Positions 2,864-55,627 of a stretch of DNA of 64,000 nt are shown here, one piece after another. The stretch is from positions 62,001-126,000 of the IMG/VR virus record IMGVR_UViG_3300030673_000004; one strand, given 5' to 3'. Positions within the stretch are counted from its first letter, which is position 1. Each line of letters begins with the position of its first letter. The notes beneath the pieces were generated by a model. It did no database searches. It saw only the letters and a list, made by a program, of their open reading frames with translations, and had not been told where the DNA came from. The translations under genes and the position numbers were made by a program.

Positions 2864-4785
2864 ACAGCATCACCATCTTCCTCGGTATCACCAGCGTCAA
2901 TTCCCAACAATTCACGACGATACTGAACTTCACTACCCATCATGTGATCTATTTCCATATCATCATCGTCATCAATAGTCAACCGCACAAGTCTACGTTT
3001 TGAAGGATCCATTGCAATCAGTCTCAGTTGATCCGGACGAAGCTCTCCCCAGCCTTTAGCTCTAGTCAAAAGTACGCTACTTCGAGGCGTTGCCTTGAAC
3101 TGAGAATACACGTCATCAGGAGTATCACCAAAAAACTTTTGGTCCTTATATGAACCTAAGTACAAAGGAGCATTTATAAAATATACGCGACCCTGCTCAA
3201 CCCAGGGACGAAAGTATAAAACAAAAAGAGCAGAAAGTAACGATGCAATGTGATATCCATCATCATCAGCATCAGTCAACATGGCAATCTTACCTACCCT
3301 GCCCTTAGATGGGTCACAACGAGAACCAACAGGCGTACCTATTGTTGTAATAATATCCATCACAGAGGGACTCTTAAGAACTTTAGCCAAAGATACCCTA
3401 CCTGTATTTAAGATCTTACCACGAATGGGTAGTATCTCCTGCCAATCAAAAGATGCAGGTTTTGCTGTGGTCCCCGCACTATCACCCTCAACGATAATAA
3501 GTTCACGATCCTCAGGACGAACCCAAGGCTTAGCTTGCTTAAGCTTTATAGGAAGATCAACACGAGCATCGCGTGCAACAATCTTCATAGATTTCACAGC
3601 TTTATTATCTTCAGATAACCGAGTAAAATTAGACTGAAATCTTTGAGATCTATCTAAGATAGCTTTAACAAGAGTCTTATTACGGGTAAAGAACTCAATA
3701 AGAGCAGGCTCTAACATATCACGAATAGGCTTAACTACGTCAGGACTCATTAATTTATTCTTTGTCTGACCCTCATAGACAGGATCCTGCATCTTAATCT
3801 GAATAGCAGCACGTAAACCAAACACTAGAAAACGAGCATCAATATCAACCTTACTATCCGTATTTACTGCTGAGGCTAAAGCAGCCTTCAAAGCACTGAC
3901 ATGAAAACCTGCCTCTTTTGTAAACGAGGAATTACAGTACGAACGTATATCAATTAAATCATTATCATACCAACATAGAGCCACAGACAAAGAAATCTGA
4001 CACTTAGCATAAGATTCTATCAAAGCAGCTCGTGAATCTAAAACAGATGCCTCTAAGAAGAAGGGCTTGCCTAAAGCATCGGGTTCTTCATCACAAGATG
4101 AAACAAAATCAAGCATACCCCGCGATGATTTGTAAGTAGTTGAAACACCATCAACAACAACATCTAAAGTTAAACCAGGATTTAGATATGAAAGATCCCG
4201 AGCTTCTTCTTGCAACCTATCCAAACTAGGATGATAATCAGCAAATAATACTTTATCTAACCGAAACGCAATCACAGTACCGCACCCAAGGCTAATATTC
4301 TTATCAGGCACAGTTTTCTTTATATCACCTAAGGCCATGCCTTGACAAAAACTCTGATAATGCCATCTATTTGAACGAAAAGTCCAAAAAGCGAAATACT
4401 CAGACAAAGCATTTGTAGCCGAGGCACCAACACCGTTCATGCCAGAAGATGTTTTATAGCTATCAGCATCAAATTTAGCACCAGCATGAATACGAGTAAA
4501 CACCGTAGTAGCTGCAGGGAGACCTGTTGCTTCATGAATATCTACAGGTATGCCACGCCCCTTGTCTGCAACATAAAATGTCCACGTAGTTGTATCAACC
4601 GTGATTTTAATATAATCACCATGGCCATCTAAGTACTCATCAATAGCGTTATCAATAACCTCACGAAGACATCGAAAAGCACCCTCATGCTCGGTAGAAC
4701 CAACATACATACCAGGTCGTCTACGAATAGCTTCAGGGAAATCAAGAACACGAATAGACTTAGCTGAGTATTTATCAGCAGGCAT
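2860..4785 (-). CDS. gyrB: Type IIA topoisomerase/gyrase subunit B
   Basis: [87 protein letters not shown]. Confidence 0.95.
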
Positions 4786-9144: not shown

Positions 9145-9200
9145 ATAATAAAAAGCACAGGTACAATATGCACCTGCGCTCCATTTACACAAGCAAAAAC

Positions 9201-9956
9201 TTAATTTTTACCGTAGATCATCTCGCCGTTTTCAAACACAAGCAAAGAACCAGAAGAGATTGGTTCCCATGCCTTATTTTGTGTAAGACCATGAGTAGTG
9301 ACAACATAACCAGTCAGAGGCTCATCTGATGGCTCTGCATCAGCGATAGTACCATCAGCGAGGAGGGGCTCAACAGGGCAAATATCCAGCCCAAAAGCAC
9401 TACCCTTATCCTTGTAAACAAAAGTACAGGCCCCATCGCTGAACACGAGATTCATGTTCCCATCATCGTTGAAAGTACGGAGAAAGGACTCAAGCTCAGT
9501 AAAATTGTAAAAATCAAGATCCAACTGATGCAAAACAGTAGCGACAGAGCAAAGCAATTGCTCTGAATCAGTCTCGCCCTTGACCGGGTATGTCAGCTTG
9601 TTAGGTTCAATCAATCCAAAAAGTGTACCATTATGAGCAAACACCCAATGATGCTCACGATAATCCAACTCAAAAGGATGTGTGTTTAGAAGAGTATGAC
9701 TGCCACAAGAAGCAAACCGAACATGACCCAAAACAATATCAGAAACCCAAGTAGGATCAGTCGCAATCTTAGTTGCGGCTGCACTTGTAACAGCACTAAC
9801 AGGCTCTTTAGCGATATCCCACACATTACCGCCAACACGATTGACCCGAGCAAATCCCCATCCGTGAGGATTACCCTTAGCACGAGCCTGAAACAACGGC
9901 ATAATACCATTCAGGCGAGCAGCCTTGTTGAAATTCATAGCAAGAAGCTCACACAT
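9201..9956 (-). CDS. Class II glutamine amidotransferase (YafJ/EgtC-like)
   Basis: Start re-set to MCELL (N-terminal Cys nucleophile); NPHGWG, GHVRFAS, NTHPF, FAHNGTL, GETDSE. Confidence 0.88.
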   Translation of the reverse strand: MCELLAMNFNKAARLNGIMPLFQARAKGNPHGWGFARVNRVGGNVWDIAKEPVSAVTSAAATKIATDPTWVSDIVLGHVRFASCGSHTLLNTHPFELDYREHHWVFAHNGTLFGLIEPNKLTYPVKGETDSEQLLCSVATVLHQLDLDFYNFTELESFLRTFNDDGNMNLVFSDGACTFVYKDKGSAFGLDICPVEPLLADGTIADAEPSDEPLTGYVVTTHGLTQNKAWEPISSGSLLVFENGEMIYGKN

Positions 9957-10011
9957 AGCAAATCTTTCGGTTGAGAGTTCTAATACAATATACGAAAAAC
10001 ATGTACGTTTG

Positions 10012-10773
10012 TCAAGGCTCGGGAAGCGCAGATACAAAAGCATCTCGAAGAACCGAGTCTGTTATAGAGGCATCAGAACACAACAACGCCTTAGTCTCGT
10101 CAAACGCATTTCGTACTGTGTCTTGAACAGCCTGAAGCACAATAGGATCCATAACACGGAAAGATGTGCCAGACACTTGCGGACATATACGCTGTATATG
10201 TGACATTATGGAAAGTAAACAAAAACTACTCAGATGATTCGCAGAATCTATAGCAAAATCATAAAGCCAAGCATACACCGATTGATAAATACGCTCTGAC
10301 ACAAATAAAACAGTAGGATCCAACGCACCGTGCGGACGTAACAGAGCCATCACGATATTAAAAGAACATTGTAGAGCTAAAGGCAAATCAGATATTGAAT
10401 TAGAACAAAAACCAACTAAAGCATCTCTCAAGATCTGAACTAAAGATATACCAGTACTAGTAGAATATGGGCTCAGATCACACATATGTGGAAATAGAGG
10501 CTGCTCTAACAAATCAGGAGTAGCACAAGCAGCAAAAACAATATAAGTAGGATCAGTAGTACCCAAATCAGCCTCAGCAACAAAATTAGATGCACCTATG
10601 CGAACATGAGAAAAATGAGAAGCTATCTGAGGATCAACAGAGGATAAATAAACAGATTTATACAAAAACAATAAAACATTAGCATAAGCACAATCAGATA
10701 CACTAAGAAAATATAGTTCATCCCCATCTGTATGCATCCCAGCAAAATGCAAACTCATGTTTTGGTCATACAC
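10012..10773 (-). CDS. Hypothetical protein
   Basis: 253-aa ORF in the gene run; no recognised motif. Confidence 0.6.
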   Translation of the reverse strand: MYDQNMSLHFAGMHTDGDELYFLSVSDCAYANVLLFLYKSVYLSSVDPQIASHFSHVRIGASNFVAEADLGTTDPTYIVFAACATPDLLEQPLFPHMCDLSPYSTSTGISLVQILRDALVGFCSNSISDLPLALQCSFNIVMALLRPHGALDPTVLFVSERIYQSVYAWLYDFAIDSANHLSSFCLLSIMSHIQRICPQVSGTSFRVMDPIVLQAVQDTVRNAFDETKALLCSDASITDSVLRDAFVSALPEP

Positions 10774-10870
10774 AAAAGCAGACCTGCTGGAATCAAGAGA
10801 AAAACAATAATCTGTAGAGTGACTTAGAGTAACATCCTGATACTCAAGCGAGGGAGTAGGAGAATCATAC

Positions 10871-10911
10871 TCCTGTTTGTATTGAGGTGTTCCACCTCAA
10901 TACAAACAGGA
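10871..10911. repeat. Perfect 19-bp inverted repeat with 3-nt loop
   Basis: TCCTGTTTGTATTGAGGTG-TTC-CACCTCAATACAAACAGGA in an intergenic gap. Confidence 0.95.
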
Positions 10912-11053
10912 CGCAGAACAAATAAATGCTCATGCGCCCTATTAGAACTACCGTCAGGATTAAAGGATAAAACATTACGGCTGTACTTAGTTAGTCTCAA
11001 AGCAAGTAAGTGCATCCTTTAATAATACAACACCTCTGCCATAAATGCAAGGA

Positions 11054-11881
11054 TCAACCTCGTAAACGAGACTCTACATCTGTGACATCTCGTGTATCCA
11101 CGGCGTAACCTGGACGAATAAAGCCAATAAAACCATCAACCTTTGCCTGTTCCTCATTATAAAACTTACCAGCAGGACCATCCAAGTAATGCACAAGACC
11201 AGTCTTTGCTTTAACGGAAGCAGGCAGAGTAACTAGATCTGTATAGTGCGCATGCACGCCTGACTTGAAAGCAGCCGTCTCGCAGTCATGAAAAATCAAG
11301 TCAGCCTGTTCATAGAACACTTTTATCTGACTAGGACAAAACTGGGTATCTGTTGTAAAGAAAACACGATACCCTTCCTCGGATGTCACCAAAATGCCAA
11401 ATGAGTCAGTCAAGGCTCGTCCATTCATGACATGAACAGTCTGAACAGGATCAAACGAAATACCTTCCCAAGTAAACGACTCATTAGGCTCAATAGGATG
11501 TAGATCAAAGTAATCAGCAAAAGTATTCACATGACCTTCAATAGACTCCAACGTACCGCGAAGAACATGCGCCCATAGCTTCGTAAGAACGGTACTAATA
11601 CCATAAAGCTTTGGCTTAGGTGCCCGAGAAACACCTCCCCAAGGATAGCGGTTAAACGCCAACCACTCAAGCCCATGGACATGGTCACCGTGCAAATGAC
11701 TGATATAGACACCATCTACATCAAAAGCACCCAGATTAGCGTATTGTGCTAGCGAGTAGGGCGCTGTAGCACCACAGTCAACCAACAAACGCTTACCTGT
11801 ATTTGATTGAATCACAGCCTGACACTGCCATAGACCAGCAGGAGCAAACGCGGAACCAGCACCAGCCCAAAGAATTTTCAT
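11054..11881 (-). CDS. MBL-fold metallo-hydrolase, Apyc1-like (putative cyclic-nucleotide phosphodiesterase)
   Basis: GAGSAF, LLVDCG, SHLHGDHVHGLE, TDT, FHDC, GVHAHY..L..LP...K.K..LVHY. Confidence 0.8.
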   Translation of the reverse strand: MKILWAGAGSAFAPAGLWQCQAVIQSNTGKRLLVDCGATAPYSLAQYANLGAFDVDGVYISHLHGDHVHGLEWLAFNRYPWGGVSRAPKPKLYGISTVLTKLWAHVLRGTLESIEGHVNTFADYFDLHPIEPNESFTWEGISFDPVQTVHVMNGRALTDSFGILVTSEEGYRVFFTTDTQFCPSQIKVFYEQADLIFHDCETAAFKSGVHAHYTDLVTLPASVKAKTGLVHYLDGPAGKFYNEEQAKVDGFIGFIRPGYAVDTRDVTDVESRLRG

Positions 11882-11955
11882 AAAAATACCTCCAAGAACA
11901 AAGATACGTCAAAATCTAAAAATCAACAGATGCAAAAATAAAGATGTGATATTAA

Positions 11956-12774
11956 TCACAACGGTACATCTAAACCAGCAAGATCCTCGGGTATACTGTA
12001 AGCTACAGACAATTTACGAGCCAAATAAGAATCCACTAACTCAGAATTATCGGATATAGCCAATTTAGAGAATATAAAATCACTACCAGCTAAGGACAGC
12101 AAGCCAAAAAGATCTAAAACGTTTAGCTCACAACCTAGCCCAACAACTCGCGTTGTGCCCACCAAGGTATCATGGTACATATGGTAATGACCATGTAAAA
12201 TAAGTCGTGGCTGTATCGCAGCAGCTACGTTATCTAACGTAGCACGATTAGCCTCCCCTGCACTATATAAGTGCTTCAAATTAAAATCAATTGAAGTAGG
12301 AGCATCATGACAGACAAGAACATCACACCTAGGAGCACACAAAGTATGCATAATATCCTTGTAGCCAATACACTCCAGACCAGGAAAAACAGTAGCGCCA
12401 AGGACACGAGAAATGGCATCAATGGAATAAGCACCACCTAAAAAGACAAAATGTAACTTCTCAAAGATAAAATGAAATCCACGCGCTGCCCAAAACAACG
12501 AGGGTAATAGCTCATGAAAAGATAATACATCAGCGCGATGAGGCAGCATATAATGATCTTCATGATTACCATCAATAAAAACAACAGGTATCCCTGTCTC
12601 TTGAGCTAGCCGAGAACAAACACGAAGAAATCTACGAAACGCGGGAATACGCGGAAAATAACCAAAATCACCAACCTGAAGAATCCTATCAACAGATTGG
12701 AGACAAGCCAACTTAAACGCTAGCTCTATAGCAGCGATATCACCATGAATGTCACCAACGACTAAAATCTTCAT
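11956..12774 (-). CDS. Calcineurin-like metallophosphoesterase
   Basis: GDIHG, VGDFG, DGNHE, CHDAP, HGHYH. Confidence 0.9.
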   Translation of the reverse strand: MKILVVGDIHGDIAAIELAFKLACLQSVDRILQVGDFGYFPRIPAFRRFLRVCSRLAQETGIPVVFIDGNHEDHYMLPHRADVLSFHELLPSLFWAARGFHFIFEKLHFVFLGGAYSIDAISRVLGATVFPGLECIGYKDIMHTLCAPRCDVLVCHDAPTSIDFNLKHLYSAGEANRATLDNVAAAIQPRLILHGHYHMYHDTLVGTTRVVGLGCELNVLDLFGLLSLAGSDFIFSKLAISDNSELVDSYLARKLSVAYSIPEDLAGLDVPL

Positions 12775-13325
12775 ACAAAAATATCAGATAATGATGTTTG
12801 ACGCGCAGTCGTTAAACCCGACTCCTGCATTAAAACAGCAAGAACATACGAATTAGGCATAATATGAGGATTTAGTTTATTAAATTCCTGTTCAGATAAC
12901 CCAAAATAACGACAAAGAAACAGACCAACAGCACCACTACGAGAGACACCAGCAGCACAATGAACATAAATAGGAGTTTCTGATACATCAGAAACATAGT
13001 CTAAAATATTACGGGCCTGAGCCGAAGTAAACAATATAGAGGCACCATCAGCTATATTAGGCGTAGAGTCAGTAAAAACAAGAGACAGTACAGAATCAAC
13101 TCCAAGACAAGATAAACCAAGCTTAGCTGTCTCTGTGTCTGCCCAAATACCTCCACTATATGATGCATATGCCAAATCTGTATCTAAGGTTACTTCATCA
13201 CAAATAGAAATAAGTTTAGCTCCTGGCACATATAAAGCAGGAAATGCCCACCTATGATGCAGCACAGACAACACCATCGCGGCACGAGGTACCACACGAA
13301 CAAAAGTAGGCTTAGCTCTAAGCAT
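12771..13325 (-). CDS. Cys-dependent protein-tyrosine/dual-specificity phosphatase-like protein
   Basis: HCAAGVSRS (CX5R) P-loop; downstream PNSYV. Confidence 0.85.
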   Translation of the reverse strand: MLRAKPTFVRVVPRAAMVLSVLHHRWAFPALYVPGAKLISICDEVTLDTDLAYASYSGGIWADTETAKLGLSCLGVDSVLSLVFTDSTPNIADGASILFTSAQARNILDYVSDVSETPIYVHCAAGVSRSGAVGLFLCRYFGLSEQEFNKLNPHIMPNSYVLAVLMQESGLTTARQTSLSDIFV

Positions 13326-13361
13326 ACTGACAAGTATACAAAAAAGTAACCATAAATGAAA

Positions 13362-14621
13362 CTATTTAGTTGGTGCTTTTGTTGTTGGAACTTTAACAGG
13401 CAGTTCTTTTGGAACCTGAAGCATAGCAACAGGAACACGCAAACGACGAATCTCACCAAATTCAGAGTGGTAGTCTACAACCTCAGTGGCTCGCTGCGCC
13501 CTGTAACCCTCACCGGCAGCATAAGCGTCACGTGGGGGCATGATAGGATGATTCTCAACAAGAAGCCCTTCGGACTCATCACGAGTAGTCAAATAAGTAC
13601 CACCTTGACGTGTCTGATGAATATGGCCACAATGACCATATCGGTACTTAGTCTGCCCCCACAATTCAGGGAAATCTGCAGATACAACAGATTGCAACCT
13701 GCGTGCCTGTATGCGGTCACCATGGGTAAACACAAGAAAGGTCTTTCCATGTACAATAGGGATTATGTTACTCGTAGGAACAACAATATGTACCTGAGGA
13801 GATTTCTCGTAAGCAGCCGCCAAAATCATAGAGGCAGCACAACTTGTATGATAATCATGATTACCAGGAACAAAAACAACTTCAACTTCAGGAGCGCGAC
13901 GAGCTGCTTCTTCTATAATAGAACGAAAAGCGAGCACGCCAAGCTGCAATGTATGCATCCAGCGACTGTCAACATCAAGGATATTCCCAGAACGCTCTGT
14001 GACAGGTGTGCGTGAATCTGCGTGCCAAAAATCGCCTAAGGAAGCTATGAGTATTTTCTGGACTTCACCGGGCGCAGGTAAACAATACTCAGCAGCACGC
14101 TTCAGTAAATTAAGACCTGCTTTAGTATCGTAGTCATCATCATTTGTTTCCTTACCCCAAGCGCGCATACCTAAATGATGATCGCTAAGCATCCAAGTGC
14201 GTAATATATTTTCTCTAGGTAGCTTTCGACAAACAGGTATCTTGGGAGCGGCACCCCGGACCTGATCTGCAAATTCTTGAGCCCACGCCTCAAATTCAGC
14301 TACATCAGGATGAAGACGACGCCACTCTTCTATAATACCCTTTTCGGAATGCACATGAACAGTTGTTTTGCTCATACGCATGCTTAGTGGGATAGGTACT
14401 TTAACTAATGATGAGTGCTCACCAGCATTTATGCAACGCTGCTCTACTCGCTTGTAGACATCGCGAACAGTACTACGAGCAAGCCCAAGCTGAGTCGCAG
14501 CGGTCCTTATAGCACCTGTAGAAATCACAGCAGCTATAATATCACGCTCTTTGGATGTCTCAACAAAGTGACTCAACTCAACAGGTATACTAACGCTAGA
14601 ACGACTCATGGATACCCCCAT
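13362..14621 (-). CDS. Metallophosphoesterase with N-terminal HTH
   Basis: IRTAATQLGLARSTVRD (HTH); SDHHLG, LGDFWH, PGNHD, THGD, GHIH. Confidence 0.85.
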   Translation of the reverse strand: MGVSMSRSSVSIPVELSHFVETSKERDIIAAVISTGAIRTAATQLGLARSTVRDVYKRVEQRCINAGEHSSLVKVPIPLSMRMSKTTVHVHSEKGIIEEWRRLHPDVAEFEAWAQEFADQVRGAAPKIPVCRKLPRENILRTWMLSDHHLGMRAWGKETNDDDYDTKAGLNLLKRAAEYCLPAPGEVQKILIASLGDFWHADSRTPVTERSGNILDVDSRWMHTLQLGVLAFRSIIEEAARRAPEVEVVFVPGNHDYHTSCAASMILAAAYEKSPQVHIVVPTSNIIPIVHGKTFLVFTHGDRIQARRLQSVVSADFPELWGQTKYRYGHCGHIHQTRQGGTYLTTRDESEGLLVENHPIMPPRDAYAAGEGYRAQRATEVVDYHSEFGEIRRLRVPVAMLQVPKELPVKVPTTKAPTK

Positions 14622-14660: not shown

Positions 14661-16940
14661 TTAATACAAATCTGGGCAAATCGAACACACAGGTGCTGCC
14701 ATAAAGGCATTGAACTTTCGGATAGCTCGATCATTCAGGCACGTTTTCAATGTATCCATAGAACAATTCTGGACATCAAACACATGAAGTATATGATATA
14801 CAAACGACAAACGTGATGGGTGTGACCAAGAATTATCATTTGCAGATATGGCAGAAATGAAACACTGCAGAAATTGGATCTGAAAATAAGTGGAAAAAGC
14901 TATAACACGAGAAGATACGCTGCTGTACCGACTATGAGACATAACATAAGAAGGCACATCATCAATACGCCTCTTAAGCGTCTTAAGATACGCACCTGCG
15001 ATAACTTTATACAAATGTGATATATCATCTGTAGAGTAAACAAGAGATGGACGTTCAAAACCAACAGCATCAAACCAGATATCGTTAAAGTAGCCGAGCA
15101 TCTCAATACCAGGCGCAATGAACTTACGGTCTGAAATCTCAAAAAACCTAGTCACACTCTCATACAATTTTGACGCAATGTGACGTGCAACGGTATCTGC
15201 ATCATGATTACTTAGAAGCTCTACAATTTCTTGAGTATACTCAGATTTCACAGTCTTATCCAAATAAGACAAAGTGTCTTCTTCAGAAGCTCCAGTTAAA
15301 ACAGTCACAGCAACAGCAGGAATAAAACCACGAGATACTTCACCGAAAAGGTCCTGACGTGCATCCACGACATCAGAATACTGACTCAAATTATCCATGT
15401 CCAAAAGACGATCAAAAATTGACGCCCCACTCACCCGACCATAGGAATAGGACAAAGTATGCAGTAACTCACGCTTATCCTCATTACCACGATAAGTAGT
15501 ACGAGAAGACTGAAATTCACGCAAGGTCCTGATAGACGAAGACCAAGGAGACACAGAAATCCGATGTACCATAACCTTAAAAATCTTTAAGCTCTTCAAA
15601 GCCAAAGGAAGCCAAATCCTTTGATACTCATGATAGTGCTGACGAGTAAAGAATAGCTTTAACAACTTAGGTACATCTAGAGCAGTAGCTCGGCACAAAC
15701 GAAACAATACAAGACCAACAAGTTCTGCAAAACCTGGCGTAGCTGCTCTTCTAGAGTCTTCAACACAAATACCGGGATACTCATCATTTCGGATATTGAT
15801 ATAACCAATAAAACGAATATCCTTATTATAGAAATTAAGACGCAAAAATGAATTGCGAGATAAGTTTCTAGCGTTTAAGCCAATCCAAAAATCACCAAAC
15901 TTAGCTACAGGCATGTCAATATCAGGAAGAGATCCCGACCCAGGTAAGGGTTTATTATTCCCAATATAACCAATATCTAAATCAGAAGGAATCCCATGAA
16001 GGCAGCGACGATATGCGGGACGATCATGGAAGGATAGCTGCGTATCCAAGGCTACTAGCCATGACAGTAATACATCTTTATTAGCTGCAATCCACACAGG
16101 ATCACATGCTAAATGAGCACACGTCATATACTCCTTCATTATAGCATAAACATATGAAGGATTTACAGAATTTAAGTAATCACCACCAATACCACGATAT
16201 TCAATAACACCATGAGATTGAAATTTAACTAAATTAATACTGACATGCCTATGCTTCGCAGCTAACCCTGTAAGACGTAAAATACCCCGAGCAGCCTCAG
16301 GCAAAAGAATATGATCTAAGCCTAATGAGGCAATACCGCAAAAAGATTTCAAGCGGGCTAGGGCATAAGAAAACAAGGACATGGTTGGAAAGCAATAGCT
16401 GTTTCCAAGGCGATTTACATGACGTAGATCACGCTGATCCAAGCAAGAAGTCAGCAACAAAAAAACCAAAGGATTAAAGTCATCACGAGTAATGGAAGAG
16501 GACGAAAATGTAAAATGGAGACCACAACTATCATTTGTTAAGCCGTTAACACGTTTTAACAAATCAAAAGATCTGCACAGTAACTTCTCACTATCTAAAA
16601 TAGAAACAACAGGGCTAACAACTTCAACAGGTAAGAAACGTGACCCATCAGTCAAATCCTCATAGTCTTCCTGCTGAGGATCAATAGATCCATCACGAGT
16701 AAAATGCCAGCATGTATAGTCAGCTTCCCCTTGATGCTTGTGACCAGCATAAACATTACAGACAGCCCCAATAGGCTGATCAAACTCACGCTGAAAAGCC
16801 GATGCTAAATCTTCACGAGAAGCACCAGGAACAGCAATAACGGTTTCAAACTCGAAACCGCAAGAATAACCGGCACGAGATAATTCAAGATCACTCATGA
16901 CAGGTACATCAAGGCTTTTATGTGCAAGAGTCAGACGCAT
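14661..16940 (-). CDS. Putative amidoligase (COOH-NH2 ligase, Amidoligase_2-like), paralog 3
   Basis: CGFEFE, WHFTRDGSI, VEVVSP, SCGLHF, HVSINL, IEYRGIGG; long unique C-terminus. Confidence 0.78.
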   Translation of the reverse strand: MRLTLAHKSLDVPVMSDLELSRAGYSCGFEFETVIAVPGASREDLASAFQREFDQPIGAVCNVYAGHKHQGEADYTCWHFTRDGSIDPQQEDYEDLTDGSRFLPVEVVSPVVSILDSEKLLCRSFDLLKRVNGLTNDSCGLHFTFSSSSITRDDFNPLVFLLLTSCLDQRDLRHVNRLGNSYCFPTMSLFSYALARLKSFCGIASLGLDHILLPEAARGILRLTGLAAKHRHVSINLVKFQSHGVIEYRGIGGDYLNSVNPSYVYAIMKEYMTCAHLACDPVWIAANKDVLLSWLVALDTQLSFHDRPAYRRCLHGIPSDLDIGYIGNNKPLPGSGSLPDIDMPVAKFGDFWIGLNARNLSRNSFLRLNFYNKDIRFIGYINIRNDEYPGICVEDSRRAATPGFAELVGLVLFRLCRATALDVPKLLKLFFTRQHYHEYQRIWLPLALKSLKIFKVMVHRISVSPWSSSIRTLREFQSSRTTYRGNEDKRELLHTLSYSYGRVSGASIFDRLLDMDNLSQYSDVVDARQDLFGEVSRGFIPAVAVTVLTGASEEDTLSYLDKTVKSEYTQEIVELLSNHDADTVARHIASKLYESVTRFFEISDRKFIAPGIEMLGYFNDIWFDAVGFERPSLVYSTDDISHLYKVIAGAYLKTLKRRIDDVPSYVMSHSRYSSVSSRVIAFSTYFQIQFLQCFISAISANDNSWSHPSRLSFVYHILHVFDVQNCSMDTLKTCLNDRAIRKFNAFMAAPVCSICPDLY

Positions 16941-16969
16941 AGATTCCTTATATATTTAAGCAACAACTG

Positions 16970-18256
16970 TCAAGTGTTACCTGCAACAATAGACTGAAGA
17001 TCAGAAATAATGCTAGTAGTATGCACAATATTCTTCACATAGTTATAAACTACATGCAGATCTCGCATCTCTTGATGCCGACTGTGAACAAGAGCACGCA
17101 GAATAGAAACAAAATGAGATGATGTTAAAAAGTCAAGCAAAGATTTTGCCCAAACAACGCGCTCTTCCGGTGTTCTTCCAGCAGTCAACCAGCGTCGAGG
17201 AGATACTGCAATCTGATGCAAGGGAAGAAAAGAACCAACAGTAGAGTGTCCTAAATGCTCTTTCCTAAAAGACAGCACTAAACCATGAACGGTATCTTTA
17301 GTGCAACGCATTTTAATACTGGGTTCCTGCGGTGAAGACCTAGGGTGAGGACCATCAAGGTCACAAACAGGGTATGTATTACTAGCAGCAGAACTAGTTG
17401 GGATCAACTCCTGCTCTGCAAAATAACGAGCAACAACTAAAGAGAGGCGCTCATGCTTAAGATGAGTAGCAGCAATCAAAGCACCCGATAAATGCTTCGC
17501 AATACCAATCAGAAGCTCCGGTGTTAGTAAAGTCAGCCAAGCACCGCCAATACCACGATACTCAACTAACTTGTTGTTGTTAGACAACTTGCAAGTATTC
17601 ACAGATACATACTTACCATAGTTGTGTAAAATTCGCTGCGACTCACATAAAGTAGCAACACTCTCCTTGCGGGTCAATGTATGATGTTTTCTATGTGCAT
17701 CAAAGCCGCCAACAGCGGATAAGGTCAGCCGTGTTGTTGCCTGACAGTAATGATTTGAAGAACGCCCAAAGTAGTTAAGTAACCCCATATCATCAGCCAG
17801 AGCACAAAACACATTAGGACGAAAAGTATCCCGTGAAAGACCAAGACACGAAAGTGATATATGTAACCCAGTAGATGGTCCTGTTTTACCACCAATACTC
17901 TGAACTAAGGCAAAAACAGACGTTAATTCGGCCAAAGCCTGATCATCCAGGACTGAAAATGTAGGAGAAATCAATTCAACAGGGCATGAACAACGATGAG
18001 ATGTTGTTATTGAACTATCTGATGTAACAGACCACTTATCATAGCTACGCGGACCATTATGATGAACACCATAGCCACCAGCTTGATCTGATACGCGACT
18101 AGACCCAAGAACAGCCAGAAGTCTATCTCGCACAGCAGTCCAATCAAGAGGGCTCGCAAACTCCAATTCCACACCAAATTTGGATTTGAATGTCTCCAAA
18201 TTTGTAAGTATGGATGGTAACGTAGCTACACGAGCATAGGACTCTAAAAAGTTCAT
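16970..18256 (-). CDS. Putative amidoligase, paralog 2
   Basis: FGVELEF, WSVTSDSSI, VELISP, STGLHI, YVSVNT, VEYRGIGG; ATG overlaps the upstream TGA. Confidence 0.8.
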   Translation of the reverse strand: MNFLESYARVATLPSILTNLETFKSKFGVELEFASPLDWTAVRDRLLAVLGSSRVSDQAGGYGVHHNGPRSYDKWSVTSDSSITTSHRCSCPVELISPTFSVLDDQALAELTSVFALVQSIGGKTGPSTGLHISLSCLGLSRDTFRPNVFCALADDMGLLNYFGRSSNHYCQATTRLTLSAVGGFDAHRKHHTLTRKESVATLCESQRILHNYGKYVSVNTCKLSNNNKLVEYRGIGGAWLTLLTPELLIGIAKHLSGALIAATHLKHERLSLVVARYFAEQELIPTSSAASNTYPVCDLDGPHPRSSPQEPSIKMRCTKDTVHGLVLSFRKEHLGHSTVGSFLPLHQIAVSPRRWLTAGRTPEERVVWAKSLLDFLTSSHFVSILRALVHSRHQEMRDLHVVYNYVKNIVHTTSIISDLQSIVAGNT

Positions 18257-20280
18257 GCAAATTCTCCCAAAAGGATTGGCTTTATCGCACGACAACCCAA
18301 CTGACGAGACAACTCATGAACAGCGCCCGTAACATACCAAGCACGTCGCATCGTTGTTGACAACTGAGCACCTGACTGTACTAGAGACTTCCTCAAAGAA
18401 CGAGTAATTCCTACCGTGTCGGAGTCAAACGAGCGCATTAGAAAGGGTGCAAGAAGTCTGCGAAGTTCTGCATAGGGAGTGAAATCAGTAGGCTGTGCAA
18501 AAACAGACATCACGTTCTCAACAGTAACAAAACTGAGTGCATCATTCCTAATGTAGTCAGAAAGGGTCGTGCAGTTCAAAGAACACTCAGGAAACAAGCA
18601 AACAAGAAGCATGTTGCGCGATACAATTTTCGTATCTTCCATACCAACCTGACGGAAAACACGATGAATATCCGAAGGACCGCAAGGATTTCCCTGGTGC
18701 AGAGCATCATCCATTATCTGAGTAACAACACGCTGAGTCATCGCAGGAAATGTTGTAGTACTCATATAGAACAAGACAGAATCCTTAGAACGTTGCATAG
18801 CAACACGTCGGACTCTATCTGACACGGAAGATACCCAGAGAGTATGGAGAGAAGCACGGTACATCTGGCGATATCGCGAAGTGCGCAGCACACGATTCAG
18901 AGAGGCTACAGAAGTCACCAACGGGGTAGCAGCAGAGGCATACTCACGCAAGAGACGCCCAGGGCTACAAGAACGCAGGGCTGCAATCAAAGAAGAAGAA
19001 AAGTCATTAGGGACAAAAGTCACCTGTGACCACTGATACAAAGACTCAAGTGCGCAAAAAATATCAAGCGCCTGACTCCGGTTTACACCAGAAGTAGATT
19101 GACGGATATTCCAGGATTCACCCGTCTTCTCCAAAGTTACCAAAGATGTACCAGAAGGCTCACTAAAACCAACAGAGGACAATGCACGAGGAGCCTTCAT
19201 AATAAACAACGAATTATCTCGCAGGTAAGCAGCATATGAAACACCCCGTACACGAGGCAACTTCCAGTAAAGGCCGCGAGAAGCTTCTGCATCAAGCAAA
19301 GAAGGAAAAACAGTTACGCGAGACGAGGGGAATAAAGAGTTTGATGGGTCCGTAGCTTGCAAAGCATAGCACAAGCGAGACTCGTAGATCGCAGACAGCA
19401 AGGGATGATCCAAAACACCACTAGCCACAAGAAAAGCTACACCAATACGACGAAACAAATCCTGCATAAAGGGCTCAGGATGCTCCAACCAGTTACCACC
19501 AGGAGAACGATACTCCATATAACCACGGCTAGATAAATTACTGGTATTAACAGAGTACCTGTCACTATAACCACTATCTCTAATAGCCTGTGCCATGCGT
19601 GTTCGCAAAGAACCACCCGACGCATTTAGAGCAGTTCGTACCAAATCAGGATTGTTACCCAACAATGACGTATAGAATACGTTAGCATAGCTATTATTCA
19701 AACGCCCACACTGAGACAAAACAAAGTGATCATCAACCAAAAGGCTAAAAAGCAGAGGATCAAAGTTTTCTCGATGAGGTGTATGAGCAGAAGAGACACC
19801 GACATGCATGCCACAGGATTCGTTTGTGTATGCCCTAATAGGTGTTTCACCATGTGCCCACCTATGGACTTTTAGATAAGTAGAAAACATATCCTGATAA
19901 TCCATCACAGGAGATACCAGTTCCAAATCAAAGGAACCAGTATCCCCATCGTCATCAAAATCAACATCATCCGGATCTAGCGAGCCATCACCTGTGAAAT
20001 GCCACTTAGTGTAACCATCGCCACGATGATCACCATACTCACGTGTAACGTGTCCAACCTCGCCACCAACAGCAGGAATGAAACTCTCAACACAATGCTG
20101 CAGATAACCACGCTCAGAATCAAAATCAGAACGATCTGGGTGCGTACCCGCAAGAATCATCTCATACTCGGCACCCAAACGAATTCCATGATGAGTAAGA
20201 TCTGCGTCAGACACGCTATCAAAGAGCTTAAGAGGAGAACGAAACAACTCGGGTGTGATTACAGAAGTAGGCATAGACAA
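18253..20280 (-). CDS. Putative amidoligase, paralog 1
   Basis: LGAEYE, WHFTGDGSL, LELVSP, SCGMHV, RYSVNT, MEYRSPGG. Confidence 0.78.
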   Translation of the reverse strand: MSMPTSVITPELFRSPLKLFDSVSDADLTHHGIRLGAEYEMILAGTHPDRSDFDSERGYLQHCVESFIPAVGGEVGHVTREYGDHRGDGYTKWHFTGDGSLDPDDVDFDDDGDTGSFDLELVSPVMDYQDMFSTYLKVHRWAHGETPIRAYTNESCGMHVGVSSAHTPHRENFDPLLFSLLVDDHFVLSQCGRLNNSYANVFYTSLLGNNPDLVRTALNASGGSLRTRMAQAIRDSGYSDRYSVNTSNLSSRGYMEYRSPGGNWLEHPEPFMQDLFRRIGVAFLVASGVLDHPLLSAIYESRLCYALQATDPSNSLFPSSRVTVFPSLLDAEASRGLYWKLPRVRGVSYAAYLRDNSLFIMKAPRALSSVGFSEPSGTSLVTLEKTGESWNIRQSTSGVNRSQALDIFCALESLYQWSQVTFVPNDFSSSLIAALRSCSPGRLLREYASAATPLVTSVASLNRVLRTSRYRQMYRASLHTLWVSSVSDRVRRVAMQRSKDSVLFYMSTTTFPAMTQRVVTQIMDDALHQGNPCGPSDIHRVFRQVGMEDTKIVSRNMLLVCLFPECSLNCTTLSDYIRNDALSFVTVENVMSVFAQPTDFTPYAELRRLLAPFLMRSFDSDTVGITRSLRKSLVQSGAQLSTTMRRAWYVTGAVHELSRQLGCRAIKPILLGEFA

Positions 20281-20448: not shown

Positions 20449-21525
20449 ATGCGAACGATGCCGTTCACCATAGTTACATGCTTCTATAAACTGTTTCAGG
20501 ATGCAGGTATCCGAGAAACTGTCAGAAACGAAGTAGCACGAGCTATTATACGTGGATGTGTCCGCATAAAATCCTATAGAGATCAGCGCAAAGCTATCAA
20601 AAACTTGATAGGTGACACTAGCGAACATCAAGTATATATAAAAGTTCAAGAACTCAAGCACTGCTATGAGATGCAGGTGCTTCTATGGAGAGCACTTTAC
20701 TGTTACATTGATACACAAGATATCTCCAAAGCAGCCTACCTATACCAGATGTCTCTGGCCGATCTAACTTGGGTCATACAACTACTATCAGAAACGCACG
20801 AGTTACAGCAAATACCCGATGTAGCACCAGCACACTGGACAACAACCCCAATAACACAACAAGATGTCTACGACATTGTACAGCACAGACGGGTACAAAG
20901 TACAATCCAAGGTCTACTACGCTACTCCAAAAGCGGTGTTGTTTGGGCGTTTGATCAAGGTATAACTAAAGAAGACTTAAAAGCGGATTTAGAATATAAG
21001 GCTATTGCTACTATACTTAGATATGAAGCAAGTCGCAGAGCAAAATGGCATCTCATAAATGTAGTTGTAATTTCTATGGGAAATGAACTAAACAACAAAA
21101 CACGTAAGTCTACATCGTTAGAATCCGGAAGAATTGTTGAAGAAACAGTAGCTGGGCCAAAAGAAAATGAACCCCAGCACACCCATGCGGCAGCTATGCA
21201 ACGCATAGTATCATTGGTTAGTACAAATGATGAAGGTGATGAATTTGAAATATCACGTGTGCCGTCAGATAATGATTTTGCAAGCCTAAGAAAAGTAACA
21301 GACATTATTGAGTGCATGAAAGAATCCCTCAATAAGCGCATACTTGACTACTTAGACGTAACAGTACTCGGAACACATAATGAACCATTTGAAACGTGGA
21401 TTGAACAGCAAGAAATAGAACATAAGCACCAACTAACTGATGATGCTATTGTCAAAAAAGCACGACAATTCTTCAAACTGACAGCTAAAGATATCAAACT
21501 AATGCAAGAGGCCCTAGTTGTCTGA
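20449..21525 (+). CDS. Hypothetical protein; weak sigma-factor region-2-like segment
   Basis: 358-aa ORF, first gene of the divergent unit; EDLKADLEYKAIATILRYE loosely resembles sigma region 2. Function is weak inference. Confidence 0.6.
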   Translation: MRTMPFTIVTCFYKLFQDAGIRETVRNEVARAIIRGCVRIKSYRDQRKAIKNLIGDTSEHQVYIKVQELKHCYEMQVLLWRALYCYIDTQDISKAAYLYQMSLADLTWVIQLLSETHELQQIPDVAPAHWTTTPITQQDVYDIVQHRRVQSTIQGLLRYSKSGVVWAFDQGITKEDLKADLEYKAIATILRYEASRRAKWHLINVVVISMGNELNNKTRKSTSLESGRIVEETVAGPKENEPQHTHAAAMQRIVSLVSTNDEGDEFEISRVPSDNDFASLRKVTDIIECMKESLNKRILDYLDVTVLGTHNEPFETWIEQQEIEHKHQLTDDAIVKKARQFFKLTAKDIKLMQEALVV

Positions 21526-24485: not shown

Positions 24486-24517
24486 AATAGACTACACCTC
24501 CTATCAGGAGGTGTCTT

Positions 24518-24907
24518 ATGGACTTAGAATCTGAGCTGCAACAGAAAAAGAGTAGTTTAATACGCATTGGAGTAATCGGTGTTATCCTGGTAGTACTGGG
24601 TGCTGTTATAGGACGAACATCCGCGCCTCTTGAAGGAGTTTATAGCTCCAAATGGGCACGAACCATAGACAGCTTAAAAGTTGTCAATGAACAACAGAAA
24701 AAACTTGCAGATACGGCTAAGATCCGCATTGACTCCCTACAGATCATTCTAAAAAAACAAAAAGAGCTAACTGCTAGCTTGTATGCCGATGTAGTTAATG
24801 CTAAGTCAAATAGGACAGTAGAACATAACAAAGTCCTTGTACTAAATGATGCAGATCTCATTGCTAAATTTCAAGATGAGATAAGCAAAGTTAAACAAGG
24901 ACACTAA
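24518..24907 (+). CDS. N-terminal TM plus coiled-coil protein (i-spanin-like)
   Basis: RIGVIGVILVVLGAVIG transmembrane helix followed by a long helical Lys/Gln-rich region. Confidence 0.5.
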   Translation: MDLESELQQKKSSLIRIGVIGVILVVLGAVIGRTSAPLEGVYSSKWARTIDSLKVVNEQQKKLADTAKIRIDSLQIILKKQKELTASLYADVVNAKSNRTVEHNKVLVLNDADLIAKFQDEISKVKQGH

Positions 24908-25551: not shown

Positions 25552-25735
25552 CTGTTGACAAGCAGACAAAAGTTAACTAAATTAGTTCTATGAAAGAACT
25601 AATTGAAGTAGACAAAGCTACTTGGGAAGCTCTAGTTGAGCTTCTTAATGCTACGGAACTGGCTCGATTCAGTTACACAACTCAAGAATCTGTGAACCAG
25701 AAAAGCGAAGCTGCCAGAAAAGCTCTCCAAGCCTC

Positions 25736-32050: not shown

Positions 32051-32089
32051 CTTCATTTTTCATAATCACCATTGTTAAGGGAGTTACTT

Positions 32090-53580: not shown

Positions 53581-53593
53581 GATTAATTTCATG

Positions 53594-53622
53594 TTGACAA
53601 GTATACATTAGAAATGTATACT
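53594..53622 (+). promoter_or_regulatory. sigma70 promoter with extended GTATACA-N7-TGTATAC palindrome
   Basis: TTGACA-agtatacattagaaatg-TATACT. Confidence 0.85.
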
Positions 53623-53660
53623 TGTTTTTGTACTTAAACTTTAACTGTGGCTGTACTTTA

Positions 53661-54942: not shown

Positions 54943-55018
54943 TGGGTTGCTGGGATGGAATATGCGCTCTTTCTAACTTAAGTATCCCTGGGGGTGCTAA
55001 GGTTACGGAGGAATTCTA

Positions 55019-55540: not shown

Positions 55541-55598
55541 TGCTATGTTATCAAAACAATAAAGTTTTGTAAAACTTGGGATTTTCTTGTTTTGACTC

Positions 55599-55627
55599 TT
55601 GACATAGATACTTCTTTATAGTATATT
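55599..55627 (+). promoter_or_regulatory. sigma70 promoter with ATACT-N7-AGTAT variant palindrome
   Basis: TTGACA-tagatacttctttatag-TATATT. Confidence 0.8.

What the first reader, a model, noticed from the sequence alone, without database searches (positions are those of the whole stretch)
11054..14621. Four adjacent phosphoesterases from three folds, one Apyc1-like
Seen: an MBL-fold hydrolase, two calcineurin-like phosphoesterases and a CX5R phosphatase in a row, all with intact motifs. Established: Apyc1 anti-Pycsar proteins are phage MBL-fold enzymes that cleave cCMP/cUMP; the 11054 protein shares the GSAF/DCG/HxHxDH/FHDC/HY pattern as I recall it. Inference: a counter-defence island that removes nucleotide signals and phosphorylation, or heals RNA ends for the ligase at 53661.
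Basis: partly seen in the sequence, partly recalled or inferred. Interest (0 to 1): 0.6.

Follow-up and report, generated by a model that had tools for sequence, protein, structure and literature searches.

The report
Phosphoesterase cluster with Apyc1-like gene
A 375-kb phage from peat and fresh water carries four neighbouring phosphate-ester-cleaving enzymes. One is a clear relative of the anti-Pycsar enzyme Apyc1, but the four are not one machine: they sit in a spot where such genes are gained and lost.

Summary
Four intact minus-strand genes fill 11054-14621:
- an MBL-fold hydrolase (275 aa);
- a calcineurin-like phosphoesterase (272 aa);
- a CX5R dual-specificity-type phosphatase (184 aa);
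- an HTH-fused calcineurin-like phosphoesterase (419 aa).

They are the only MBL, Metallophos and CX5R genes found in the 375,537-bp phage genome.

The MBL protein passes Pfam's Anti-Pycsar_Apyc1 model (94 bits, cut-off 50). It matches solved Apyc1 structures far better than YhfI or RNase Z. It keeps all metal ligands and the E74 equivalent, and evolves under strong constraint (dN/dS about 0.04). It lies in an untested clade beside, not inside, the tested Bacillus-phage Apyc1 clade. In relatives the gene is lost, stopped by an in-frame TAA, or placed elsewhere.

The 419-aa protein belongs to PHROG 704, found in about 2,000 phage records, where it sits in replication and recombination modules.

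The CX5R and 272-aa genes overlap by 4 bases. They stay paired in five lineages and change 5-8 times faster than their neighbours.

Relatives add a DHH-DHHA1 enzyme or a weak NADAR-like gene at this locus.

Verdict: a new member of the Apyc1 family in a variable accessory locus. A single four-enzyme pathway and RNA-end healing are not supported.

The parts
11054..11881 (-). Apyc1-family MBL-fold (class II) phosphodiesterase, 275 aa. It has its own strong ribosome-binding site (GGAGG 7 nt before the ATG).
   Evidence: PF23023 94 bits, cut-off 50. PDB phmmer: Apyc1 7u2s 96 bits, 7u2r 81, 7t28 71, against YhfI 6kns 25 and RNase Z 28. Ligands H62, H64, D66, H67, H150, D178, H210, H231 and E72 are kept. 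dN/dS about 0.04. RBS read.
11956..12774 (-). Calcineurin-like metallophosphoesterase, 272 aa (MPE272). Its ATG overlaps the stop of the CX5R gene (ATGA). Substrate unknown.
   Evidence: PF00149 47.4 bits; phrog_1649 1.8e-29. D8, H10, D36, N70, H71, H156, H194, H196, H198 are invariant in six lineages. Overlap read. Fast evolving: dN 0.22 at dS about 1. Atlas neighbours are generic viral and actinobacterial Metallophos clusters.
12771..13325 (-). Atypical dual-specificity (CX5R) phosphatase, 184 aa. It forms a conserved two-gene unit with MPE272.
   Evidence: P-loop HCAAGVSRS. Invariant C123, G126, R129, S130, N158; D86 nearly invariant. AF2 pLDDT 95. Foldseek: PTPMT1, Tk-PTP, PRL, DUSPs at TM 0.45-0.5. 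phrog_5614 7e-18. 874 relatives in the 1.84-billion library. dN 0.37, the fastest in the block.
13362..14621 (-). HTH domain plus calcineurin-like phosphoesterase, 419 aa, of the PHROG 704 family ('DNA repair exonuclease' by annotation only).
   Evidence: phrog_704 1.8e-72. 1,970 phage records hold a relative. Invariant D147, H149, D197, N254, H255, H300, H333, H335. AF2 pLDDT 87 with an N-terminal helical HTH at residues 14-65. VIA-align: PolD DP1 Z 14.6, LpxH 13.3, MJ0936 13.3, Mre11/SbcD 12-13. dN/dS 0.03-0.05.
14661..18295 (-). Two Amidoligase_2 genes (759 aa and 441 aa) directly upstream. They form the conserved frame of the block.
   Evidence: PF12224, 53.9 and 38 bits. Kept upstream of the 419-aa gene in L003, L004, L029 and L011.
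9201..10043 (-). GATase_4 (class II glutamine-amidotransferase-like) gene. It is the downstream end of the conserved frame.
   Evidence: PF13230 130 bits. Kept in L003, L004, L029 and L011.
10015..11015 (-). Frameshifted copy of a 333-aa gene of unknown function that lies between the MBL gene and GATase_4 in relatives.
   Evidence: tblastn: residues 1-45 lie in frame -3 (11015-10881) and residues 50-333 in frame -2 (10869-10015). Freshwater strains carry one extra C behind 10880. The gene is absent in L029.
9152..9182 (-). Strong terminator-like hairpin (14 pairs plus a T run) just after GATase_4. It is the likely end of the co-directional block.
   Evidence: Consensus scan only. The best promoter-like site upstream is at 20309-20281 on the minus strand. 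Neither was tested with RNA data; no RNA runs hold this DNA.

Best explanation
The cluster is a composite, not one machine.

(1) The gene at 11054-11881 encodes an Apyc1-family binuclear-metal MBL phosphodiesterase. It most likely opens 3',5'-cyclic mononucleotides to 5'-NMPs. This would let the phage blunt cNMP-dependent immunity (Pycsar-type cCMP/cUMP signalling) or host cNMP signalling. In this phage it is strongly constrained. Across the phage clade it is a dispensable, movable accessory gene.

(2) The gene at 13362-14621 belongs to the widespread, slowly evolving phage family PHROG 704 (HTH plus calcineurin-like phosphoesterase). It most likely acts as a nucleic-acid phosphodiesterase or nuclease in phage DNA metabolism.

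(3) The CX5R phosphatase (12771-13325) and the 272-aa metallophosphoesterase (11956-12774) form a translationally coupled pair. The pair is specific to this phage clade and evolves fast. Its substrate is unknown, and a host-directed target is plausible.

All four genes lie in one co-directional block framed by amidoligases and a GATase_4 gene. In related phages, other nucleotide-processing genes are inserted or lost at this locus.

Shown here: gene integrity, family membership, motif conservation, synteny, gene flux and evolutionary rates. Inferred: cNMP hydrolysis, the anti-Pycsar role, nuclease activity of the 419-aa protein, and host-directed action of the pair.
For: MBL protein:
- PF23023 94 bits against a cut-off of 50.
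- Its best solved relatives are three Apyc1 structures (96, 81 and 71 bits), against YhfI 25 and RNase Z 28.
- RNase Z equivalog models give 50 bits or less against cut-offs of 252 or more.
- In the tree it lies with PF23023 proteins and next to the tested SBSphiJ/BSP38 clade. E. coli RNase BN, PhnP and a YhfI-like protein lie outside.
- All metal ligands, the E74 equivalent (E72) and the FHDC motif are kept. The loop after LRGxLE has the same length as in the solved Apyc1 7u2s.
- dN/dS is about 0.04.

MBL as an accessory gene:
- Absent in L011.
- In-frame TAA at codon 46 in L029 and L030, from two different samples.
- Unrelated neighbourhoods in L002 and L006, although L006 shares other genes with this window.
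- Identical between L003 and L004 while the neighbouring genes differ, which shows a mosaic.

419-aa protein:
- phrog_704 at 1.8e-72 and 1,970 phage records.
- Relatives sit next to RecA/Thy1, RecT/SSB or polynucleotide kinase.
- Fold is nearest PolD DP1 and Mre11/SbcD.

CX5R/MPE272 pair:
- The 4-base overlap and the adjacency are kept in the window, L003-L005, L029, L011 and L032, at 35-59% identity for the phosphatase.
- dN is 0.22-0.37, against 0.03-0.05 for the flanking genes at equal dS.

Gene flux: a DHH-DHHA1 gene in L003, L004 and L029 is missing from this genome, and L011 has a weak NADAR-like gene instead of the MBL gene.
Against: - No enzyme activity was measured.
- The window's MBL clade is a sister of the experimentally tested Apyc1 clade, not part of it, and is separated by long branches. 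The joining branch has only 81% SH-aLRT support.
- SBSphiJ Y112, needed for cCMP hydrolysis there (PMC9117128), is S113 here.
- PMC11370490 reports that more than 80% of Apyc1 homologues lie in non-mobile bacterial DNA. It also reports that loop variants can be weak or inactive. Family membership therefore does not prove an anti-Pycsar role.
- The nearest non-phage relatives (45-50% identity) are chromosomal.
- The host is unknown, so whether it has Pycsar is unknown.
- The four-gene order is kept in four of five lineages of the clade. A shared function cannot be excluded.
- Fold matches for the 419-aa and CX5R proteins do not discriminate between substrates.
Confidence: 0.55

Rival explanations
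1. One reading: the four enzymes form one coherent counter-defence island. Together they strip nucleotide immune signals and defence-kinase phosphorylation, for example MBL opening cNMPs and the phosphatases removing the resulting phosphates.
For: All four are adjacent, co-directional and together hold every MBL, Metallophos and CX5R gene of the genome. The order 419 / CX5R / MPE272 / MBL is kept in the window, L003-L005, L029 and L032. Relatives add a DHH-DHHA1 phosphoesterase or a weak NADAR-like gene at the same locus. This fits the 'counter-nucleotide' gene sets described for jumbo phages (PMC7824862).
Against: Relatives of the 419-aa gene in about 2,000 phages lie in DNA-metabolism modules without the other three. 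The MBL gene can be lost, broken or moved while the other three stay. CX5R homologues outside the clade have no Metallophos neighbour. Rates differ 5-8 fold within the block. Synteny within one phage clade can be plain common descent.
Confidence: 0.2
2. The phosphoesterases heal broken RNA or DNA ends (2',3'-cyclic phosphate or 3'-phosphate removal) for the phage's RNA ligase. This would repair tRNA or mRNA cut by host anticodon nucleases.
For: An RNA ligase (PF09414, 96.6 bits; phrog_24030) lies at 53622-54317 and a TROVE/Ro-like protein at 32072-33478. In Webervirus phages a PHROG 704 gene abuts a polynucleotide kinase gene. From established knowledge, the Clostridium thermocellum Pnkp end-healing domain is a calcineurin-like phosphoesterase. 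PMC7824862 notes calcineurin-like 3'-phosphatases in a few jumbo-phage RNA-repair sets.
Against: The ligase is about 40 kb away on the other strand and is never syntenic with the cluster in relatives. No polynucleotide kinase passes in the genome: AAA_33 gives only P-loop fragments of 17 bits or less. The MBL protein is Apyc1-like, not an RNase Z or CPSF-type RNA enzyme.
Confidence: 0.1
3. These are housekeeping genes for nucleotide economy. They break down host nucleic acids, nucleotides and cNMPs to feed phage DNA synthesis, with no dedicated immune-evasion role.
For: The block lies among replication genes: gyrase B/A-like genes at 227-4785 (homologues), a DNA ligase at 21518-23017, a helicase at 41084-42331 and a dUTPase-like gene at 55895-56665. 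Most Apyc1-family genes are chromosomal and thought to regulate cNMP levels (PMC11370490). A mycobacteriophage metallophosphoesterase degrades host DNA (PMC12287305).
Against: Housekeeping genes are rarely lost, nonsense-mutated and relocated among close relatives, as the MBL gene is. The fast evolution of the CX5R/MPE272 pair fits interaction with variable host factors better than bulk salvage. The mycobacteriophage enzyme is a different family (phrog_221), with no significant similarity.
Confidence: 0.15

Closest known systems
Apyc1 of Bacillus phage SBSphiJ / BSP38 and Paenibacillus Apyc1 (PDB 7t28, 7u2r, 7u2s; Hobbs et al. 2022, PMC9117128)
   Same: MBL-fold class II phosphodiesterase of similar size. 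It passes the same Pfam model. It has HxHxDH, the further His/Asp ligands, the E74 equivalent, the FHDC and HY motifs and the W-x3-L-x-G-x-L segment. The loop length equals that of 7u2s. It is a single accessory gene in a large phage.
   Different: Only 28-35% identical. It lies in a separate clade whose nearest relatives are chromosomal bacterial genes at 45-50% identity. S113 stands in place of SBSphiJ Y112. It has a 4-residue insert after the TVH motif and a C-terminal extension of 25-40 residues. The host is an unknown peat or freshwater organism, not a member of the Bacillales. No member of this clade is known to me to have been assayed.
PHROG 704 'DNA repair exonuclease' of T1-like (Drexlerviridae), Jersey-like, Vibrio and Rhodobacter phages
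   Same: The match covers nearly the whole length (residues 39-401 against profile positions 23-389 of 390). It has the same N-terminal HTH plus five-motif calcineurin-like core.
   Different: About 25-31% identity. Here the gene sits after amidoligases rather than in a RecA/RecT/PNK module. The family's name is an annotation, and I found no experimental test. It lacks the capping and Rad50-binding domains of Mre11/SbcD. The genome's SbcC-like gene lies about 17 kb away.
Atypical dual-specificity phosphatases (PTPMT1, PRL, Tk-PTP, DUSPs) and phage phrog_5614 proteins (Pseudomonas phages PAJU2, PhiPA3, 201phi2-1)
   Same: HCX5RS P-loop, an upstream Asp and a DSP-type fold.
   Different: TM-scores reach only 0.45-0.5 and Pfam DSPc is below threshold for this sequence. 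Unlike its homologues in other phages, it is translationally coupled to a metallophosphoesterase.
Gp48 metallophosphoesterase of mycobacteriophage A10ZJ24 (PMC12287305)
   Same: A phage calcineurin-like phosphoesterase with the five motifs. It is reported to aid escape from host immunity.
   Different: It belongs to a different PHROG (221). BLASTP to either window protein is not significant (E 0.11 and 1.1). Its reported action is degradation of host DNA, which was not tested here.
Counter-nucleotide phosphodiesterase sets of jumbo phages (Iyer et al. 2021, PMC7824862)
   Same: A jumbo phage carries several phosphoesterase superfamilies, among them DHH and calcineurin-like, which that paper predicts to act on signalling nucleotides. 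The locus is variable.
   Different: The passages I read list HD-GYP, HD-alarmone, DHH, T5 A1-like calcineurin and 2H phosphodiesterases. A text search of the paper found no 'metallo-beta-lactamase' or 'DSP'. The clustering of three to four folds at one locus is specific to this clade.

Membership tests
Apyc1 (anti-Pycsar protein 1; Pfam PF23023) | Scores above the curated family threshold | tested here: met
   94 bits against a cut-off of 50, covering residues 3-234 and profile positions 5-223 of 250. The same result came from the six-frame genome search.
Apyc1 (anti-Pycsar protein 1; Pfam PF23023) | MBL-fold class II phosphodiesterase with HxHxDH and the other two-metal ligands | tested here: met
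   H62, H64, D66, H67, H150, D178, H210 and H231 align with SBSphiJ, BSP38 and Paenibacillus Apyc1.
Apyc1 (anti-Pycsar protein 1; Pfam PF23023) | Closer to Apyc1 than to the cAMP/cGMP-preferring YhfI-type MBL phosphodiesterases | tested here: met
   phmmer gives 96, 81 and 71 bits to solved Apyc1, 25 bits to YhfI (6kns) and 33 bits to BA1088 (1zkp). The YhfI-like Bacillus protein falls outside in the tree.
Apyc1 (anti-Pycsar protein 1; Pfam PF23023) | Catalytic residues supplied by the other protomer (SBSphiJ E74 and Y112, PMC9117128) | tested here: inconclusive
   E74 corresponds to E72 and is kept. Y112 corresponds to S113 and is not kept. Y112 is also absent in the solved Paenibacillus Apyc1 proteins.
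Apyc1 (anti-Pycsar protein 1; Pfam PF23023) | Apyc1-specific nucleotide-binding loop of working length (shortened or lengthened loops are weak or inactive, PMC11370490) | tested here: inconclusive
   By alignment the segment after LRGTLE has the same length as in 7u2s, is one residue longer than in 7u2r and two shorter than in SBSphiJ.
Apyc1 (anti-Pycsar protein 1; Pfam PF23023) | Falls inside the clade of experimentally tested Apyc1 enzymes | tested here: not met
   It lies in a separate clade of 11 sequences (100% support). That clade is sister to a bacterial and metagenomic clade. The tested SBSphiJ/BSP38 clade is the next group, reached by a branch of length 2.07.
Apyc1 (anti-Pycsar protein 1; Pfam PF23023) | Hydrolyses cCMP/cUMP as well as cAMP/cGMP to 5'-NMP and rescues phage from Pycsar | not testable with these tools
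   This needs an enzyme assay and a plaque assay.
RNase Z / RNase BN | Passes the RNase Z equivalog models and has the tRNA-binding exosite insert with a length of about 300 aa or more | tested here: not met
   NF000801 gives 50.1 bits against 252, and TIGR02651 gives 48.5 against 293. Both match only the N-terminal motif region. The E. coli RNase BN inserts are absent. RNase BN is the outgroup in the tree.
Calcineurin-like metallophosphoesterase (PF00149) | Five motifs: DxH, GD, GNH[DE], H, GHxH | tested here: met
   272 aa: D8/H10, D36, N70/H71, H156, H194-H198. 419 aa: D147/H149, D197, N254/H255, H300, H333/H335. Both are above the Pfam cut-off.
Mre11 / SbcD nuclease | Capping domain, Rad50/SbcC-binding C-terminus, and a gene next to its SbcC/Rad50 partner | tested here: not met
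   The 419-aa model has an N-terminal HTH and no C-terminal capping or binding domain. Mre11 matches reach Z 12-13, no better than LpxH or MJ0936. The SbcC-like gene (L035 6470-9004) is about 17 kb away and its neighbour is not a Metallophos gene. Binding was not tested.
PPP-type Ser/Thr phosphatase (lambda phosphatase type) | GDxHG, GDxVDRG and GNHE motifs | tested here: not met
   The 272-aa protein has GDIHG and GNHED, but its second motif is GDFGYF without DRG. That form is invariant in six lineages.
Dual-specificity / PTP-fold phosphatase (PF00782) | HCX5R(S/T) P-loop, a general-acid Asp, a DSP fold and the Pfam threshold | tested here: inconclusive
   The P-loop and D86 are kept, and the fold matches DSP/PTP. 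The Pfam score of 24.9 is below the 33.5 cut-off for this sequence, though 55 of 66 homologues match DSPc down to 8e-20.
Phage RNA repair set (kinase + end-healing phosphoesterase + ligase) | A polynucleotide kinase is present and linked with the ligase | tested here: not met
   No AAA_33/PNK hit exceeds 17 bits. The ligase lies 40 kb away on the opposite strand. Relatives show no synteny between them.
Anti-defence island (cluster of counter-defence genes at a variable locus) | Variable gene content between close relatives and at least two genes with a demonstrated counter-defence family | tested here: inconclusive
   Variable content is shown for the MBL gene, the DHH-DHHA1 gene, the NADAR-like gene, the 333-aa gene and the 83/89-aa gene. 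Only one gene, the MBL gene, belongs to a family with demonstrated counter-defence members.

The most novel reading that the evidence does not exclude
The locus would be a 'counter-nucleotide' hot spot of a peat and freshwater jumbo-phage clade. Its fixed core would be the fast-evolving, translationally coupled CX5R-phosphatase / metallophosphoesterase pair, acting as a new two-enzyme counter-defence module. That module might dephosphorylate immune signalling nucleotides or targets of defence kinases. Around it, interchangeable signal-degrading genes (Apyc1-like MBL, DHH-DHHA1, NADAR-like) would be swapped in and out according to the host's defences.
Probability: 0.15. Interest if true: 0.75.

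Novelty: new member of a known kind. Interest (0 to 1): 0.45.

Why it matters
- If the enzyme cleaves cNMPs, it extends tested Apyc1 biology from Bacillales phages to an environmental jumbo-phage lineage. It would be a further case of phage co-option from chromosomal genes, as proposed in PMC11370490.
- The natural loss, nonsense and relocation variants offer a ready-made comparison set for asking when a phage needs the gene.
- The CX5R/metallophosphoesterase pair is an uncharacterised, rapidly evolving two-gene unit that can be tested directly.
- For annotation: the 419-aa 'DNA repair exonuclease' label across about 2,000 phage genomes has no experimental backing that I could find.

Tried and rejected
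- Megablast of the region against 50,697 phage records found no match.
- The search for related loci with the 419-aa protein in viral contigs found nothing. Relatives were reached through the protein word search and exact-protein look-ups instead.
- RNase Z reading of the MBL protein: rejected.
- Homology of either metallophosphoesterase to the mycobacteriophage A10ZJ24 Gp48 counter-defence enzyme: rejected.
- The 419-aa protein as the SbcD partner of the phage's SbcC-like protein: the architecture does not fit and the genes are not adjacent. Binding was not tested.
- The 316-aa neighbour of the SbcC-like gene as a hidden SbcD: it has no Metallophos motifs and no family hit.
- RNA-end healing for the ligase: there is no kinase and no linkage.
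- Sequence searches of PDB for the 272-aa and 419-aa proteins gave nothing significant.
- Foldseek for the 419-aa model gave only low TM-scores (0.37-0.47).
- No RNA runs hold this DNA, so the operon structure rests on consensus scans only.
- A literature search for a tested function of phage metallophosphoesterases with cyclic nucleotides found only unrelated families.
- The preprint 10.1101/2024.04.14.589459 held nothing relevant.

Full report
WHAT IS THERE.

The window is bases 62001-126000 of a 375,537-bp virus record with direct terminal repeats, judged complete. It is a jumbo phage. Near-identical DNA occurs in peat metagenomes, and related strains occur in freshwater metagenomes.

- 13362-14621 (419 aa);
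- a 36-nt gap;
- 12771-13325 (184 aa);
- a 4-nt ATGA overlap;
- 11956-12774 (272 aa);
- a 74-nt gap;
- 11054-11881 (275 aa), with its own GGAGG ribosome-binding site.

Pfam assigns the 275-aa protein to Anti-Pycsar_Apyc1 and both the 272-aa and 419-aa proteins to Metallophos. The 184-aa protein matches DSP-type phosphatases only below threshold.

In the whole genome these are the only two PF00149 hits, the only PF12706 hit and the only HCX5R[ST] motif, among about 378 ORFs. The clustering is therefore real.

THE MBL PROTEIN.

Sequence and family evidence:
- It scores 94 bits on PF23023 (cut-off 50).
- Against all PDB chains, its three best matches are the three Apyc1 structures (96, 81 and 71 bits). 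YhfI, BA1088 and RNase Z score 25-33 bits.
- NCBI's RNase Z equivalog models reach 50 bits or less against cut-offs of 252 or more, and only over the N-terminal motif.

Alignment with SBSphiJ Apyc1 (the founding member), BSP38 (solved), Mater, a Paenibacillus homologue, a YhfI-like protein and E. coli RNase BN:
- All metal ligands are kept.
- The residue matching SBSphiJ E74 is kept, as are the FHDC motif and the W-x3-L-x-G-x-L segment. These are shared with Apyc1 but not with YhfI or RNase BN.
- SBSphiJ Y112, needed for cCMP hydrolysis there (PMC9117128), is S113 here. That Tyr is also missing in the solved Paenibacillus enzymes.
- The loop has the same length as in 7u2s. This matters because PMC11370490 reports weak or no activity in homologues with a shortened or lengthened loop.

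Tree (IQ-TREE, LG+C20):
- The protein sits in a fully supported clade of 11 metagenomic sequences.
- That clade is sister to a large group at 45-50% identity. All members of the group carry PF23023, and many lie on megabase bacterial contigs.
- The tested Bacillus-phage clade is the next neighbour.
- RNase BN, PhnP and the YhfI-like protein lie outside.

The protein is a family member, but of an untested branch. It looks like one more independent phage acquisition from cellular genes, the pattern proposed in PMC11370490.

THE OTHER THREE.

The 419-aa protein:
- It matches PHROG 704 over its whole length (1.8e-72).
- It has relatives in 1,970 phage records: T1-like, Jersey-like, Vibrio, Rhodobacter and others.
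- Its five metallophosphoesterase motifs are invariant in 77 homologues.
- The AF2 model (pLDDT 87) shows an N-terminal HTH, a beta-hairpin and the phosphoesterase core.
- Exhaustive structural comparison puts the PolD DP1 proofreading exonuclease first (Z 14.6). LpxH, MJ0936 and many Mre11/SbcD chains follow at Z 12-13. The fold leans towards nucleases but is not decisive.
- More distant homologues sit beside RecA/Thy1, RecT/SSB or polynucleotide kinase.

The 184-aa protein:
- It has the P-loop HCAAGVSRS and a conserved Asp.
- The DSP-fold model is confident (pLDDT 95).
- Its nearest solved folds are PTPMT1, Tk-PTP, PRLs and DUSPs at TM 0.45-0.5. No substrate can be read from this.

The 272-aa protein:
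- It is a generic five-motif calcineurin-like enzyme (phrog_1649).
- Its relatives are mainly in actinophages and Actinomycetota.
- It lacks the DRG of PPP phosphatases.
- It is unrelated, beyond the superfamily, to the mycobacteriophage counter-defence enzyme Gp48.

SYNTENY, GENE FLUX AND RATES.

Relatives were recovered by exact-protein look-ups.

| Lineage | What it holds at the locus |
|---|---|
| L003, L004, L005 (MBL 92% identical) | Whole block: amidoligases, 419, CX5R, MPE272, MBL, 333-aa gene, GATase_4 |
| L029, L030 (MBL 85%) | All four genes, but the MBL gene has an in-frame TAA at codon 46 in two samples; no 333-aa gene |
| L032 | 419, an 83-aa gene, CX5R (35%), MPE272 (45%), MBL (78%) |
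| L011 | Four amidoligases, 419 (71%), an 89-aa gene, CX5R (39%), MPE272 (42%); then a 142-aa protein with a weak NADAR hit and a 400-aa protein in place of the MBL gene |
| L006, L002 (MBL 67% and 74%) | MBL gene in unrelated neighbourhoods, although L006 shares other genes with this window |

L003, L004 and L029 also carry, just after GATase_4, a 345-aa gene. Its Pfam DHH and DHHA1 matches are below threshold (21-25 bits), but the DHH and GGGH motifs are visible in the sequence. This genome lacks the gene altogether.

Outside the clade, CX5R homologues have no Metallophos neighbour.

Rates, at equal synonymous divergence (dS about 1) between the window and L003/L004:

| Gene | dN | dN/dS |
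|---|---|---|
| MBL, 419 aa, GATase_4 | 0.02-0.05 | about 0.04 |
| MPE272 | 0.22 | 0.22 |
| CX5R phosphatase | 0.36-0.37 | 0.25-0.32 |
| 759-aa amidoligase | 0.21-0.34 | 0.14-0.19 |

Between L003 and L004 the MBL genes are identical while the CX5R genes are 74% identical. This shows recombinational mosaicism.

INTERPRETATION.

The block is a composite.
- The MBL gene is a constrained but dispensable and movable accessory gene of the Apyc1 family. Hydrolysis of cNMPs, with a counter-Pycsar or cNMP-signal role, is the best-supported mechanism, though it is inferred.
- The 419-aa gene is a core-like phage gene, probably acting on nucleic acids.
- The CX5R/MPE272 pair is the only true linked unit. 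Its rapid change suggests a host-facing role.
- The locus as a whole is a gene-flux hot spot for nucleotide-processing enzymes.

RNA-end healing is unsupported. The RNA ligase is distant and unlinked, and no polynucleotide kinase was found.

LIMITS.
- There are no activity data, no host assignment and no RNA data.
- Promoter and terminator calls are consensus matches only.
- In scripts, the in-frame stop in L029 was read as X.
- No other genetic code was used.

Noticed in passing
window 10870-10885 (gene remnant 10015-11015, minus strand): The homologue of a 333-aa gene of relatives is split by a frameshift. Contigs of two freshwater runs carry one extra C behind 10880, while the peat assemblies agree with the window at 19-97x depth. 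The gene is absent altogether in L029.
   Followed up: partly
L029 and L030, 9470-10297: The Apyc1-like gene of this related phage has an in-frame TAA where the window has Q46. The rest of the gene is 85% identical. It is seen in two samples, so it is a natural null allele or a read-through site.
   Followed up: partly
L003 12755-13792, L004 12808-13848, L029 11239-12273: Relatives carry a 345-aa gene just after GATase_4. Its Pfam DHH/DHHA1 matches are below threshold, but the DHH and GGGH motifs are visible. This genome lacks it: the window goes from GATase_4 through a terminator-like hairpin to the next gene. A distant homologue lies 7 kb from the MBL gene in L002.
   Followed up: partly
L011 12869-13297 and 13443-14645: Where the window has the MBL gene, this relative has a 142-aa protein with a weak NADAR-domain hit (20 bits, cut-off 35) and a 400-aa protein with no family. 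The 142-aa protein has a 24%-identical match elsewhere in this genome (G000 288198-288608).
   Followed up: no
window 14661-18295 and 9201-10043: Two Amidoligase_2 genes and a GATase_4 gene frame the cluster. L029 has three amidoligase genes upstream and L011 four. The amidoligases evolve as fast as the CX5R/MPE272 pair. Their target is unknown.
   Followed up: no
L003 versus L004 (8542-10828): The MBL genes are identical (dS 0.005), but the adjacent CX5R genes are 74% identical (dS 1.4) and the 419-aa genes 94%. This is a recombination mosaic with a breakpoint inside the cluster.
   Followed up: partly
window 21518-24485, 32072-33478, 53622-54317: Other nucleic-acid repair genes lie in the window: an ATP-dependent DNA ligase-like gene, a neighbour with a weak Pol-beta thumb hit, a TROVE/Ro-like RNA-binding protein and a PF09414 RNA ligase.
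   Followed up: partly
L035 4521-9004 (G000 53520-58003, just upstream of the window): An 844-aa SbcC/Rad50-like gene has a zinc-hook hit but no adjacent SbcD-type gene. Its downstream neighbours are a 316-aa protein with no family hit and a Cas4-like exonuclease.
   Followed up: partly
window about 24000-27000: GC skew and AT skew change sign here, and the coding strand switches from minus to plus. This could be a divergent transcription point or a replication-related switch.
   Followed up: no
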